A DNA stretch of 64,000 nucleotides. It comes from Mobula hypostoma (lineage: Eukaryota). The notes beneath the pieces were generated by a model that was not told the DNA's origin, ran no database searches, and saw nothing but the letters and a program-made list of their open reading frames with translations. Of the stretch, positions 8,906-64,000 are shown piece after piece (position 1 is the stretch's first letter; every line of letters starts with the position of its first letter). Where the stretch lies: the NCBI RefSeq assembly GCF_963921235.1, contig NC_086129.1, forward strand, positions 23,808,001 to 23,872,000. Reading direction: 5' to 3'. A program made the position numbers and the translations under genes.

Positions 8906-9356
8906 AGTTTTCTCCTATTATGATAGAGCAAGGAGAATCTTATACTACCCTTTGCACACAGAATCATTTCTTAACATCTCTCACGATAATGTGTCCAATT
9001 GTTACACTGTATCCATCCCAGACTTACAAATGTTAGCTATCGTTTCTCCCTATCTACTATGCCTGTTTTCCTAAGTATGTCAAATTAAGTGCCTGATCTT
9101 CTGGAAGTCCTGTTCACGTAATTGATCTGTATAACTCAACTGTTGATCTGAGTACAAAGACATCTCACTCTGTGGAGGAGAAGTGAGCCAGAGGAGATTT
9201 AGATGTGCCTTACTATTTCCGAGCTATAGTGACATGATTATACAAATAATTTATTCAGTGTATAAGTCAAAGAACCTGAAAATTGGAAATAATTTTCATT
9301 ACAATTGTTTGTGAAGATTGGAAGCCTATGTTTTGCAATTTCCCTACCCTTAGATG

Positions 9357-9921
9357 GGTGTGTATGGGGTGTCAGGGAGGGGGAGCACCTCTGGTGGGGG
9401 AACATGTCGTGTCCTTTTCCAGGTGGTTAGCCCAGCTTTGGTCCCCACCTGGCACTCAGCTCACACCTGTGGCTCCCCGTATCTGTTTGCATACGACAGC
9501 GGCCACACTCCGGGCAACGGCTTCAACAAGCCGGCTAAACCAGGTGAGGGTAGCTGACGGGTCTCAAACCCTCGGTGAGATAGGGAGTTGTCTATCCCAC
9601 AATGTGAAGACAGACTCCGGCGGATTGAGCGGACGAGACCAATGGAAGGTCCAATGGTCGAGAAGGCCGTCTCTGCAAGCGTTGTGGAACGCGTAGAGCA
9701 CGACAAGACACAGAAGACGTCCTGGTCATCCACCGCGCCTAGTCCCATCTCCAGCTGTCTCGACTCTGTCTTGACACTGGATCCAGATGGGAAGTGGGAA
9801 GAGAGAGTGAGGCTGACGCTGCGCAACTCTCCCTCACTTAAATCCAAATCATGCACTAGTCTTGGCACCATCAATGGTGTCGAGGTCATCATCGACGACG
9901 ACGATGGACGAACATGGATGG
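9357..9921 (+). mobile_element. Non-autonomous retroelement (probably RTE-related) with 5' HDV-like ribozyme
   Basis: GC-rich island flanked by an 11-bp direct repeat ACCCTTAGATG 9346-9356/ACCCTTAAATG 9922-9932; 3' GAC/GAT/GATG simple-repeat tail; no RT ORF. The RTE link is inference. Confidence 0.65.
9366..9546 (+). ncRNA. HDV-like self-cleaving ribozyme (predicted), copy 1
   Basis: P1 GGGGUGU 9366-9372/ACACUCC 9505-9511; P2 CACCUG 9464-9469/CAGGUG 9541-9546; P3 GGC 9471-9473/GCC 9502-9504; L3 begins UCCCCGU; GGGCAAC 9512-9518; P4 GGCUU/AAGCC; J4/2 GG-C(9535)-UAA. Confidence 0.72.
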
Positions 9922-10296
9922 ACCCTTAAATGAATTTTAAATACCTGCCTGAAGAAACTTGTTAGAATTAGGGGCAGTGAACTTGGACTTCTTGTCCCAT
10001 CACTGCTGAACATCACCGGCTGCTTTGATTATCTCGGCCCTCCCACCCTTTAGAATTAACTCAGTCCAAATCAGAGCTAACTGCAGCCCAAAGAGGGTGC
10101 ATTGCTCCACTCACTCTTGATTGTAATTAGGAAATTTTGTGATAAATGAACAAGTAATAAGCTTCCTTCCAAACAGGTGCTAAGCCTTAGCCAAGTTTAT
10201 GCAGGATATTTCAGAGTTCAAAGAATGCAGCCAATGCCTGGTAGATAACATATAATATTTTTTAAATGAAATTCTTTAATTGTTTAAAGAATTAAA

Positions 10297-37989: not shown

Positions 37990-38554
37990 GGTGTGTATGG
38001 GGTGTCAGGGAGGGGGAGCACCTCTGGTGGGGGAACATGTCGTGTCCTTTTCCAGGTGGTTAGCCCAGCTTTGGTCCCCACCTGGCACTCAGCTCACACC
38101 TGTGGCTCCCCGTATCTGTTTGCATACGACAGCGGCCACACTCCGGGCAACGGCTTCAACAAGCCGGCTAAACCAGGTGAGGGTAGCTGACGGGTCTCAA
38201 ACCCTCGGTGAGATAGGGAGTTGTCTATCCCACAATGTGAAGACAGACTCCGGCGGATTGAGCGGACGAGACCAATGGAAGGTCCAATGGTCGAGAAGGC
38301 CGTCTCTGCAAGCGTTGTGGAACGCGTAGAGCACGACAAGACACAGAAGACGTCCTGGTCATCCACCGCGCCTAGTCCCATCTCCAGCTGTCTCGACTCT
38401 GTCTTGACACTGGATCCAGATGGGAAGTGGGAAGAGAGAGTGAGGCTGACGCTGCGCAACTCTCCCTCACTTAAATCCAAATCATGCACTAGTCTTGGCA
38501 CCATCAATGGTGTCGAGGTCATCATCGACGACGACGATGGACGAACATGGATGG
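37990..38554 (+). mobile_element. Same non-autonomous retroelement, copy 2
   Basis: Duplicate of 9357-9921 with the same TSD. Confidence 0.65.
37999..38179 (+). ncRNA. HDV-like ribozyme (predicted), copy 2
   Basis: Same sequence as 9366-9546; catalytic C retained at 38168. Confidence 0.72.
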
Positions 38555-59720: not shown

Positions 59721-61252
59721 TGAGTATCTAATCCATTTCTTCCTAACTTTGCTGAATTCAATTTCAAAACATGCCTCAGTGTATTGTGGACTTGAGCAGT
59801 TCCTCCCTGATTGCTTTACTCTGTCCTTTAAAGCTCACTAATATGGAGTTGGTGCACTTGCCAATTTGTTGGATTTTAGTGCCAGATTCTCTCAGTATAG
59901 TGGTTTCCATTTCATTTCATTCCTTGCTTTAGACTGAGTAAAGATTGCATACTTGGTGTGTTGTTTATAGTCTGTCATAAGCCCCGTCTTAATAAGATAA
60001 TCAAAATTCAGTTAAAAACCTGAAAGAGTATAGAATAATACAAATACATTCTCAGACTAAAAGTATAACTGATCATTCTTGCCTTTTCTGAAGGATGCGA
60101 ATCTGCCTGATGTTTGTTTTACGATGAATGATACTATCCAATCATACGTCATTTGCCCGAAAAGGTAAATTAACTATGTTGTAACAGTCATGATCTTCCC
60201 TCCCTCCTGGTCTTTGGTGAACTGACAGCCTTGTTCTTCTTCTTTTTTAGTTTAGTGGCGGTTGGCAACCAGTTTTCAGTGCATTACCGCCACCTGCTAG
60301 ACTTGGGGTGTTCCAACCAAGTATGTCCTGGAGTTCTCTACTTTAGACAATCTAGTTTAGCCTGCAGTTCTCTGTCAGCTTCACTCTGTAGTTGCAATTC
60401 CTCGTGACTGTTTAATGCGCTCATTAGATAATGCCGCAAACTGCTATTCTTCCCTAATTATGTCACGTTTTCGTGTAGTTGCATTACCTCAATTACATTG
60501 ATTTCATCTACATCACTTGTAAGACTAAAATCATCTTGTTAAAGAATAGTAATTATCGCACGTTATACTTTTAAACTTCTTGTTTTTCCAAGTCTATCTG
60601 CTTTTTCAGGTTTTCCTTTTCTTGGATCATAGCCTGCAGTTGTTTACTGAGACCTTGGAGTTCTTCTTCATTTGCTTCCATGTTTTCATTTTATAATCTG
60701 AATGTGGATAGTTCACTTTGCAACAAATTCCTTTTCTTTTTGTATCCTTGTAATAATTTGCTCCATTTTCCAATCTCTTTTCCAACTCACAGTTGTTCTT
60801 GTCGGGTGCATCTATTTGTTGTTGGAGTTCTGCACATTTAACCTGGGCTTCAACCATAAAATCTGAGGATTTTCCTTAAGTTCTGAAACATATTTCTTTC
60901 ATTCTTGACCATTTGCGATAAATATGTTGCCATTAAGATTCCATCTCCCCTGCCTGTGAACTGCTGGATTCTCCATTCAGCGTTTCTTTGACTTCCTTCC
61001 ACCTAATTCCTTTAATACCAAGATACTTTTCTGCAGACCGGACGATAATTTTAATCACACACCTTAAGCAGGTCTTGAGTTCATTGTGATGTTTGCTGAC
61101 ATCATGAAGTGTAACAATGGCATAGCATCATCAGATGTAACCTCTACAGGACTCCTTTGGGTACTGTATCAATAGCAGCCTAAATGTACGTAATAACCTG
61201 GTGGTTATTATACCTATCAATAGTTTGGTATCTCATCTGCGGATCGGAAGAC

Positions 61253-61765
61253 ATGAGCAAGACAACCACCAACCAAGACCTGGACTCCAAGGATCGCAGC
61301 AGTTCCAGGGTGATGCAGCCTCCAGGTGGTGAATCCAGTATCTCATTGGGGCTGGAGGAAAATGCCAAACCAGTGCATTCCCGTCCAAGCAAAACTGCAT
61401 CCAATATCTTTGGGCCACCATTGCAAAATCAACCTGTGGCTAGAAGAAGGAACCCGCCAGGTGGAAAAAGTAGTGGTATCTTTCAGGCAGCTACCACTGA
61501 AACACCTGATCTAAAGCAACGGAGAAATCCTCCTGCTGGCAAGACAAGTGGCATCTGTGACATTGTGGAAATACCTCCCAAAACTCCGGATATCGCAACT
61601 GGGGAAGGTGAAAATAGCCCAGGTTCCTCCGAAACTGAAAACCAAATGGAAGCCCAGGGAAAGAGAGGAGAGTGTGTGCCTGGGCCAGTAGAGTCTGCTC
61701 AAACTGAACCAGTAAGGCGCAAGAGAGTCCCACCTGGTGGATGGTCTACCATTGTGCTGGGGTAA
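61253..61765 (+). CDS. JPT1: Intronless Jupiter-family (JPT1/HN1-like) gene, copy 3, 170 aa, divergent
   Basis: Intact ORF with SSSRVMQPPGG, ASNIFG, NPPGGKSSGIF and PPGGWSTIVLG*; 18 aa differ from copy 1; AATAAA 61802-61807; upstream in-frame ATG at 61184. Confidence 0.85.
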   Translation: MSKTTTNQDLDSKDRSSSRVMQPPGGESSISLGLEENAKPVHSRPSKTASNIFGPPLQNQPVARRRNPPGGKSSGIFQAATTETPDLKQRRNPPAGKTSGICDIVEIPPKTPDIATGEGENSPGSSETENQMEAQGKRGECVPGPVESAQTEPVRRKRVPPGGWSTIVLG

Positions 61766-63620
61766 ATCCACTGTTCACCTCAGTGTATCAGCTGCAGACT
61801 GAATAAACATTGATTTTATTGTAACCTTAAAATTTGAGCGTCACCATTTTGTATTGGCACTTTACATTTGAATGGTCCATAGGTGCTCAAAACATGAGGC
61901 CTGCTGGAAAAGGCACGCGTCATTTATTCCCTGTGATGTGAAGTACTGAGTGTTTGTTTTTCTTGTGACTTCAGACTTAATTCTGGCATTTTTGACTTGG
62001 TATTTGGATGTGATTTGTGATTGGAAAAAAAAATTGGCATGCTCTGGGCTTTGATGATGCTGGACTTGTTGATTTTCTGTATTATTGGATGTTGGAATTC
62101 CCCAACATACTTTTAATACTCTTTTTTAAAATCTTACCCAGTATTATAAAAACTTTTCCAATGAATTTGTTAAACTTAAAGTTGCAGGAAATAAAGTTTA
62201 AAGAGAGTTGAAGGGAGTGTGGAAACCAAGGATTTGTCAAGTTGGAAGGAGCATGACAAACAACTCTGGTGATGCCAAATCATTGAGGTTTCCACATAAT
62301 TGGATGATGGATTACCGGAACTTTACTCTAATTTCAGTATCATGGCAAACTCATGTGTATCCCCAGCCCATTAAATACCGAATACAGAACTCTGAGCAAC
62401 ACTCCCTTTGCAAAGTTTAAATCTTTAATGGTTCGGTCAAGGGATGAAAGTTCCTCATGTTCATGCGAGGAACATGGGACTGTGAATGGAGCTCAGTTGC
62501 AAACTGAGTGACCTCAAAGTCAGGAGGAATTGTCTCTCTTCCTGTTTACCACACCAGATTAATTTCTGTTTGAGCAGCGTAAAGAATGGCCTCTTGGAGA
62601 ATTAGAATTAGATATTGCCACCATTTTGATGTGCTCCTTTTTGGTCCATTCTGATGACCCCATCAGTCCTTCTTCACTTAAACCTAGGACCCGATAGCCA
62701 GCTGCTTCTGACAGGAAATATCCTTTCTTGTCTTGTAGCACTGTGGTTTGCGCGAAGCTTCTACAGCTTAGGGTGTCAGAGTTTGGAGTTTAATTCCGAC
62801 ACCATTTGTAATGAGTTTGTACGTTCTCCCCGTGACCGCGTAGGTTTTGTCTGGGTGCTCTGGTTTACTCCCACAGTCCAAAGACCTACTGGTGAGTAGG
62901 TTAATTTGTCATTATAAATTGTCCTGTAATTAGGCTACTGTTAAATAGTTGGGTTGCTGGGTTGGGCTGCAAGGGCCTGTTCTGCGTTGTGTCTCTAAGA
63001 CAAATAAACTATAGAAATTTCCATAATTTTCCTGAGATGCAGGGGTCTGCAGGTGCTGGAAACTGGAGCAACACACACAAAAGCCAAAGGAACTCAGCAG
63101 GTCAGGGAGCACCAATGGAGGGAAGTGGACAGTCAATGTTTTGGGTTGAGAGCCTTTATCTGGACTGATAGTTTTCTCCTATTATGATAGAGCAAGGAGA
63201 ATCTTATACTACCCTTTGCACACAGAATCATTTCTTAACATCTCTCACGATAATGTGTCCAATTGTTACACTGTATCCATCCCAGACTTACAAATGTTAG
63301 CTATCGTTTCTCCCTATCTACTATGCCTGTTTTCCTAAGTATGTCAAATTAAGTGCCTGATCTTCTGGAAGTCCTGTTCACGTAATTGATCTGTGTAACT
63401 CAACTGTTGATCTGAGTACAAAGACATCTCACTCTGTGGAGGAGAAGTGAGCCAGAGGAGATTTAGATGTGCCTTACTATTTCCGAGCTATAGTGACATG
63501 ATTATACAAATAATTTATTCAGTGTATAAGTCAAAGAACCTGAAAATTGGAAATAATTTTCATCACAATTGTTTGTGTAGATTGGAAGCCTATGTTTTGC
63601 AATTTCCCTACCCTTAGATG

Positions 63621-64000
63621 GGTGTGTATGGGGTGTCAGGGAGGGGGAGCACCTCTGGTGGGGGAACATGTCGTGTCCTTTTCCAGGTGGTTAGCCCAGC
63701 TTTGGTCCCCACCTGGCACTCAGCTCACACCTGTGGCTCCCCGTATCTGTTTGCATACGACAGCGGCCACACTCCGGGCAACGGCTTCAACAAGCCGGTT
63801 AAACCAGGTGAGGGTAGCTGACGGGTCTCAAACCCTCGGTGAGATAGGGAGTTGTCTATCCCAGCATGTGAAGACAGACTCCGGCCAATTGAGCGGACGA
63901 GACCAATAGAAGGTCCAATGGTCGAGAAGGCCGTCTCTGCAAGTGTCGTGGAACGTGTAGAGCACGACAAGACACAGAAGCCGTCCTGGTCATCCACCGC
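63621..64000 (+). mobile_element. Same non-autonomous retroelement, copy 3 (cut by window end)
   Basis: Duplicate of 9357-9736 with several substitutions. Confidence 0.65.
63630..63810 (+). ncRNA. HDV-like ribozyme, copy 3, predicted inactive (C75U-equivalent)
   Basis: Same fold, but CCGGCTAAAC reads CCGGTTAAAC (T at 63799). Confidence 0.65.

What the first reader, a model, noticed from the sequence alone, without database searches (positions are those of the whole stretch)
63630..63810. Natural catalytic-dead ribozyme allele (C75U-equivalent) beside the divergent JPT copy
Seen: the only difference I found within the ribozyme between copy 3 and copies 1/2 is C>T at 63799, exactly the predicted catalytic cytosine (9535, 38168), and it is not a CpG cytosine. 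Known: C75U abolishes HDV ribozyme cleavage. Inference: array units come in ribozyme-ON and ribozyme-OFF forms linked to different JPT variants. A single substitution could be chance.
Basis: partly seen in the sequence, partly recalled or inferred. Interest (0 to 1): 0.7.

Follow-up and report, generated by a model that had tools for sequence, protein, structure and literature searches.

The report
Dead ribozyme copy in ray SINE
One of three duplicated copies of a jumping-gene remnant in a devil-ray genome has a single C-to-T change at the letter that most likely powers its self-cutting RNA; this looks like ordinary decay of a passenger sequence, not an ON/OFF switch tied to the neighbouring JPT gene.

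Summary
Within the 190-nt stretch, copy 3 differs from copies 1 and 2 at one base only: T at 63799 against C at 9535 and 38168, in a non-CpG context.

The stretch is the 5' head of a ~565-nt non-autonomous retroelement (9357-9921). It has a target-site duplication and roughly 10^4 copies in Mobula reads.

No Rfam family matches it, and a relaxed HDV descriptor hits random sequence about as often as it hits the window. The HDV-like fold is still credible. It starts at the element's first base. A LINE relative from a metagenome (L005, 80% identical) keeps the fold with three compensatory base-pair changes, one in P2 and two in P4. The J4/2 cytosine is C in every relative and T only in copy 3.

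So copy 3 probably carries a cleavage-dead head, as C-to-U does in HDV and R2 ribozymes. The ON/OFF reading linked to JPT variants is not supported:
- The element inserted once, before the unit was duplicated, and is a passenger.
- The substitution rate in the ribozyme (1 in 190) equals the local neutral rate (5 in 1066).
- The RNA(?) contigs leave the unique DNA between JPT and the element uncovered.

The finding is ordinary. Earlier notes of this scan describe what looks like the same ribozyme family on other DNA of this genome.

The parts
63799..63799 (+). T in copy 3 at the predicted catalytic cytosine of J4/2. Copies 1 and 2 have C at 9535 and 38168.
   Evidence: The column is C in L005, L004 and L006. 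Ala (GCC) stands at the matching minus-strand codon in P0001 and P0002, against Thr in copy 3.
63621..63810 (+). Predicted HDV-like ribozyme head of the retroelement in copy 3 (copy 1: 9357-9546; copy 2: 37990-38179).
   Evidence: Descriptor hits at copies 1 and 2 only. Pair counts on A4: 95.3% of cells paired, 3 compensatory pairs.
63621..63627 (+). First candidate P1 5' strand, at the element's first base. It reads GGTGTGT in all three array copies and GGGGTGT in L005 and apparently in the family, so the array copies have a U.U at pair 3.
   Evidence: Family contigs clip at 63624 with GGG before it (table 7).
63630..63636 (+). It is a 9-nt tandem repeat of the first and forms 7 of 7 pairs with 63769-63775.
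63728..63733 (+). P2 5' strand (CACCTG), pairing with 63805-63810 (CAGGTG).
   Evidence: One compensatory C-G to U-A change in L005 (helix 2).
63735..63768 (+). P3 (GGC/GCC) enclosing a 28-nt L3. Its CC at 63739-63740 forms P1.1 with GG at 63776-63777, and it holds an inner hairpin CTGT/ACAG.
   Evidence: Pairs are invariant in all 5 rows (helices 3-5). L3 is far longer than the canonical 7-8 nt.
63769..63775 (+). P1 3' strand (ACACTCC; ACACCCC in L005, L004 and L006).
63782..63797 (+). P4 hairpin (CGGC, 8-nt loop, GCCG).
   Evidence: Two compensatory pairs in L005 (CTAC/GTAG) (helix 6). P4 is nearly deleted in L004/L006.
63610..63620 (+). Upstream target-site duplication (ACCCTTAGATG). The downstream partner is seen only for copy 1, at 9922-9932 (ACCCTTAAATG).
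   Evidence: The copy 3 partner lies beyond the end of the window.
9357..9921 (+). Complete retroelement in copy 1 (about 565 nt), carrying C at 9535.
   Evidence: TSD. Present only as the three paralogous copies in the window.

Best explanation
The stretch is the 5' head of an old, non-autonomous LINE-derived retroelement. It inserted once and was then copied along with the ~28-kb JPT unit. The head most likely encodes an HDV-like self-cleaving ribozyme, with a long J1/2 and a hairpin-expanded L3, which in active family members trims the co-transcript at the element's first base. In copy 3 a neutral C-to-T transition hit the J4/2 cytosine that acts as the general acid. That copy's RNA, if ever made, would not cut itself. 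The change is passenger decay and has no regulatory link to JPT. Shown here: the substitution, the element and its boundaries, conservation of the C, and compensatory pairs in P2 and P4. Inferred: catalysis, loss of catalysis, and neutrality.
For: The single difference is shown. The element is defined by an 11-nt TSD with one mismatch. Contig depth is 7e4-2e5 over the element against 10-25 on unique DNA, with a sharp 5' boundary at about 63621-63624. L005 carries the same head at the 5' end of a LINE with an AP-type endonuclease ORF. On A4, 95.3% of cells are paired against 23-45% with slid partners, and 3 pairs change on both sides against 0 in every slid control. C is ancestral: it stands in L005, L004, L006, P0001, P0002 and in a contig of organism B. 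The local substitution rate is 5/1066 against 1/190 in the ribozyme. JPT-like RNA contigs stop at 62020, and depth is zero on 62084-62725 and 63261-63581. Literature: C-to-U at the catalytic C eliminates R2 ribozyme cleavage, and dead R2 copies and single natural variants lose activity (PMC3774820). HDV-like ribozymes are known in RTEs, LINEs and SINEs (PMC6765202).
Against: No Rfam model matches, even at E<=10. My relaxed descriptor hits Markov-simulated windows 1.26 times on average, so the fold alone is not significant. The MFE fold is a different nested structure with z about -1. All compensatory changes come from a single relative, L005. P1, P3 and P1.1 show no covariation. Cleavage has never been assayed. 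The RNA runs are small, only guessed to be RNA, and kept as contigs, so low-level read-through cannot be excluded.
Confidence: 0.78

Rival explanations
1. One reading: array units exist as ribozyme-ON and ribozyme-OFF forms that shape the 3' ends or stability of transcripts from different JPT variants, and the C-to-T is a selected switch.
For: The element lies 1.6-1.9 kb downstream of JPT on the same strand. The only change in 190 nt is at the key base.
Against: There is no RNA contig on the unique DNA between JPT and the element, although JPT-like RNA reaches depth 2000-3000. That RNA has 17-23 differences, so it comes from another paralog or the parent gene, and it ends at the A-run at 62024-62032. 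An AATAAA lies at 61802-61807. The substitution density is neutral. Linkage is trivial with one divergent unit.
Confidence: 0.05
2. The fold is not a ribozyme. It is a conserved 5' UTR structure or sequence of the LINE family with another role (promoter, protein binding), or a chance fit, so the C-to-T has no catalytic meaning.
For: No Rfam hit. Descriptor false-positive rate of about 1.3 per window. A 28-nt L3 is far outside the canonical 7-8 nt. A competing MFE fold exists. The first P1 pair is G-C rather than the G.U of HDV (my recollection).
Against: A chance descriptor hit starting within about 10 nt of a given element's first base on the sense strand has probability of about 2e-4 (derived). 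There are compensatory changes in the pseudoknot helix P2 and in P4. P3, P1.1 and GCU[A/G]AACC are invariant across relatives of 73-80% identity.
Confidence: 0.13
3. The T at 63799 is an assembly or consensus error in a tandem array.
For: No independent contig bridges the unique flank to 63799.
Against: Copy 3 carries many other private differences nearby, so it is a distinct, well-resolved paralog. The row for 63799 in the differences table was not printed, so the reads neither support nor contradict the T.
Confidence: 0.04

Closest known systems
[quoted passage not shown]
   Same: The fold sits at the element's first base. It is a nested double pseudoknot with a 7-bp P1, a 3-bp P3, a 2-bp P1.1 and a C in J4/2. 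A long J1/2 and a variable P4 occur in R2 too (J1/2 of 23 to over 700 nt, PMC3774820). A non-autonomous derivative shares the head with its parent LINE, as NARTc and R2 SIDEs do.
   Different: L3 is 28 nt with an inner hairpin instead of 7-8 nt. The host is a cartilaginous fish. No Rfam model detects it. Activity is untested.
HDV C75U / R2 C294U catalytic mutants, and naturally inactive R2 ribozyme copies
   Same: The change is a C-to-U at the J4/2 cytosine. PMC3774820 reports that this substitution eliminates R2 self-cleavage, that a single natural G-to-A junction variant is inactive, and that dead elements lose activity.
   Different: Here the variant is a paralog difference inside a segmental duplication, and its effect is only predicted.
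CPEB3 intronic ribozyme SNP (a natural variant affecting cleavage rate; from my own knowledge)
   Same: It is a natural single-base variant in a genomic HDV-like ribozyme.
   Different: The CPEB3 ribozyme is a conserved single-copy element in a transcribed intron. This one is a decaying repeat copy with no evidence of local transcription.

Membership tests
HDV-like self-cleaving ribozyme | Nested double pseudoknot: P1, P1.1, P2, P3 and P4 in the canonical order | tested here: met
   The structure can be written on copies 1 and 2. On A4, 95.3% of cells are paired against 23-45% for slid partners.
HDV-like self-cleaving ribozyme | Helices supported by compensatory changes | tested here: inconclusive
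   There are 3 compensatory pairs (1 in P2, 2 in P4), all from one relative, L005. P1, P3 and P1.1 are invariant or change on one side only. 13 of 500 shuffles reach the observed score.
HDV-like self-cleaving ribozyme | Catalytic cytosine in J4/2 (C-N-R-A context) | tested here: met
   Met in copies 1 and 2 (CTAA), L005 (CTAA) and L004/L006 (CTGA). Not met in copy 3 (TTAA), which is the finding itself.
HDV-like self-cleaving ribozyme | Short L3 (7-8 nt) closing a 3-bp P3 | tested here: not met
   L3 is 28 nt in Mobula, 29 in L005 and 25 in L004/L006, with a conserved inner stem CTG(T)/(A)CAG. This makes it a variant architecture.
HDV-like self-cleaving ribozyme | Match to a curated covariance model (Rfam HDV, CPEB3 and drz families) | tested here: not met
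   No match at gathering threshold on the whole window or at E<=10 on the two local stretches. This is expected if the L3 and J1/2 insertions break the models, but I did not test pruned sequences.
HDV-like self-cleaving ribozyme | Site-specific self-cleavage 5' of the first P1 base | not testable with these tools
   This needs an in vitro transcription and cleavage assay.
Ribozyme-headed non-LTR retroelement | Ribozyme starts at the element's first base, and a parent LINE shares the head | tested here: met
   The TSD ends at 9356. Family contigs clip at 63624. L005 starts with GGGGTGT right after AT-rich flank and carries an endonuclease ORF.

The most novel reading that the evidence does not exclude
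The C-to-T in copy 3 was favoured because cleavage by the element's head would truncate a read-through or antisense-regulating transcript specific to that unit. On this reading, paralogous units of an amplified retrogene array differ in a ribozyme-based RNA-processing switch.
Probability: 0.03. Interest if true: 0.6.

Novelty: new member of a known kind. Interest (0 to 1): 0.15.

Why it matters
It matters little as biology. Individual copies of ribozyme-headed retroelements are expected to lose key bases, and this has been shown for R2. The practical value is modest but real. Copies 1 and 3 differ by one base in 190 nt, so they form a natural wild-type and catalytic-mutant pair for the first cleavage test of this L3-expanded HDV-like variant. 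That variant is abundant in rays and invisible to Rfam models. The 9-nt duplicated P1 strand at the 5' end also offers a natural test of cut-site choice, as modelled for R2.

Tried and rejected
- **Exon reading.** The stretch has ag|G...CAG|gtgagg borders and two open frames. I rejected this because of the ~10^4-fold repeat depth, the TSD, and the absence of RNA on the flanks.
- **Rfam.** Nothing at gathering threshold or at E<=10.
- **Other family copies in the window.** None beyond the three paralogs.
- **JPT copy 3 protein look-up.** It was found only in the source assembly, and no DNA was served. The same happened for P0001.
- **Word search with the element's minus-strand ORF.** It gave only two annotated Mobula proteins.
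- **The search for related loci on metagenomes with that ORF.** Nothing.
- **21-mer scan of viral contigs.** Three chance matches in phage-like contigs with no flanking similarity. A gapped pattern on viral contigs found none.
- **Read laying.** The row for 63799 was among 112 rows not printed, and no contig bridges the flank to the site, so the T allele and its frequency among units stay unconfirmed.
- **MFE folding.** It gives a competing nested fold and no signal.
- **Findings search by sequence.** Blank.

Full report
**Observation.** Copies 1 and 2 have C at 9535 and 38168, and copy 3 has T at 63799. The context is GG[C/T]TAAACC, so it is not a CpG. A blastn difference list for copy 3 against copy 1 shows this is the only difference in 63621-63810. 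The nearest others are at 63578 and 63864.

**What the stretch is.** My first impression was an exon, because of the ag|G...CAG|gtgagg borders and two open frames. That was wrong.

The stretch heads a ~565-nt element at 9357-9921. It is flanked by an 11-nt target-site duplication with one mismatch: ACCCTTAGATG at 9346-9356 and ACCCTTAAATG at 9922-9932. The element occurs once per ~28-kb unit and nowhere else in the window. So it inserted once, before the unit was duplicated.

Earlier notes of this scan name the genome as a Mobula. A look-up places the JPT copy 3 protein in assembly GCA_963921235.1.

I laid Logan contigs of two DNA runs on 60800-64000. Summed depth is 7e4-2e5 over the element and 10-25 on unique DNA. 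There are 68-69 contigs whose unlike ends begin just before 63624, and those ends finish in GGG. The family therefore has on the order of 10^4 copies and a sharp 5' end at about 63621.

**Is it a ribozyme?** Rfam gives nothing at gathering threshold or at E<=10 locally. The MFE fold is a different nested structure with z about -1.

I wrote a relaxed HDV descriptor with these terms:
- a 7-bp P1 starting with G
- a 6-bp P2
- a 3-bp P3
- a 2-bp G-C P1.1
- C-N-R-A in J4/2
- L3 up to 30 nt and J1/2 up to 100 nt

It hits only copies 1 and 2 on both strands of the window. Copy 3 fails solely because of the T. However, 283 first-order Markov windows give 1.26 hits on average. The fold alone is therefore no better than chance.

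Two independent facts carry the case. The first is position. A chance hit starting within about 10 nt of a given element's first base, on its sense strand, has probability of about 2e-4 (derived). The 5' terminus is where HDV-like ribozymes sit in R2, RTE, Baggins and L1Tc (PMC3774820, PMC6765202).

The second is relatives. A gapped pattern scan of metagenome contigs found three:
- L005 is 80% identical over 9356-9611. It begins with GGGGTGT directly after AT-rich flank. It continues into a 461-aa ORF with an AP-type endonuclease domain (PF03372, PF14529). It is thus a LINE with the same head.
- L004 and L006 are one 5'-truncated insertion seen in two assemblies. They are 93% identical to each other including flanks.

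On alignment A4 the structure I named gives 95.3% paired cells, against 23-45% when 3' partners are slid. Three pairs change on both sides: C-G to U-A in P2, and G-C to U-A and G-C to A-U in P4. No slid control shows any such pair, and 13 of 500 shuffles reach the observed score. P3, P1.1 and the inner L3 stem never vary.

This is real but thin support, because all the compensatory changes come from L005. Earlier agents of this scan reached the same reading for what appears to be the same family on other DNA of this genome. I treat those notes as leads only.

**Is 9535 the catalytic C?** In the fold it is the first unpaired C after P4 (CGGC/GCCG) and is followed by TAA. One base later the 3' strand of P2 begins. 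The column reads GCU[A/G]AACC in copy 1, L005, L004 and L006.

From memory, HDV has GGC75GAA here and GGGCAAC after P1, and this element also has GGGCAAC after P1. That is a recollection, not a test.

C is ancestral. Besides A4, two other Mobula copies annotated as proteins on the minus strand (P0001, P0002) have Ala (GCC) where copy 3 has Thr (ACC). A contig of organism B carries AGCCGGCTAAACC (table 5c).

PMC3774820 reports that a U for the catalytic C at position 294 of a silkmoth R2 ribozyme eliminated self-cleavage. It also reports that a single natural G-to-A variant and dead elements are inactive. So copy 3 is most likely cleavage-dead, if the head is active at all.

**Cut site.** The 5' end carries a 9-nt tandem repeat: GG(T/G)GTGTAT followed by GGGGTGTCA. 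Either 7-mer can pair with 9505-9511.

The element, L005 and the family contigs all start at the first repeat. The cut in active members is therefore probably at 9356/9357, as an earlier agent argued (s1-141828). In all three array copies base 9359 is T where L005 and the clipped family ends have G. This gives a U.U in that P1 (pair 5-156).

PMC3774820 discusses just such duplicated P1 strands and notes that U.U mismatches in P1 can depress activity. Copies 1 and 2 may therefore not be fully ON either.

**ON/OFF linked to JPT?** The evidence does not support this, for three reasons.
- Copy 3 is the divergent unit everywhere, so linkage is automatic.
- From 62798 to 63863 copy 3 and copy 1 differ at 5 of 1066 sites (0.47%). 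One difference in 190 nt of ribozyme is exactly that rate. This shows neither constraint nor acceleration.
- In the two runs guessed to be RNA, a JPT-like transcript covers 61265-62020 at depth 2000-3000. It has 17-23 differences from copy 3, so it comes from another paralog or the parent gene. It stops at the A-run at 62024-62032, which looks like the retrocopy's poly(A) remnant, and an AATAAA lies at 61802-61807. Depth is zero on the unique stretches 62084-62725 and 63261-63581.

The RNA contigs on the element itself differ from copy 3 at 4-11 positions per 70-120 nt and come from the family at large.

These runs are small, kept as contigs, and only guessed to be RNA. Rare read-through is therefore not excluded.

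**Limits.** The T could not be confirmed from independent reads, because the flank contig ends at 63653 and the row for 63799 was among 112 rows not printed. I have one informative relative for covariation. No cleavage data exist.

**Verdict.** The base change is real and sits on the best candidate for the catalytic C of a credible, non-canonical HDV-like ribozyme. It is best read as neutral decay of a passenger retroelement copy. This is a known kind of event and of low interest, apart from offering a ready-made mutant control for a cleavage assay.

Noticed in passing
window 63864-63981 (copy 1: 9600-9717): Nine substitutions between copy 3 and copy 1 cluster in 118 nt of the element body, including two adjacent-pair changes (CA>GC, GG>CA). 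The preceding 1066 nt hold only 5. This could be a gene-conversion patch from another family member or a patch of older ancestry.
   Followed up: partly
window 9357-9374 / 63621-63638: The P1 5' strand is duplicated as a 9-nt tandem repeat at the element's 5' end. The first copy carries T at 9359 in all three array units where L005 and the family have G. This resembles the duplicated-P1 model for R2 cut-site shifts.
   Followed up: partly
window 62726-62939 and 63047-63153: Two stretches upstream of the element belong to another extremely abundant repeat (summed contig depth up to about 1.9e5 in DNA runs and about 1e4 in the RNA(?) runs).
   Followed up: no
window 61265-62032: The only JPT-like RNA contigs (run X22) differ from copy 3 at 17-23 positions and end at the A-run at 62024-62032. 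The expressed gene is therefore another paralog or the parent, not copy 3.
   Followed up: partly
P0001, P0002 (M. birostris, M. hypostoma): The element's minus-strand ORF is annotated as part of 'uncharacterized proteins' in two other Mobula genomes. One gene model spans about 9.9 kb. This suggests exonised or mis-annotated copies of the repeat.
   Followed up: no
L005:1004-3168 (minus): A metagenome contig (Ga0224511_10037724) carries a LINE of unknown host with this ribozyme head, a 5' UTR of about 780 nt and an endonuclease ORF. L004 and L006 hold one 5'-truncated relative in two assemblies.
   Followed up: partly
window 63699 (9435, 38068): All three array copies have G where nearly all family contigs read C (103232 of 103374 depth in X1). 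This is a private change of this insertion, in J1/2.
   Followed up: no
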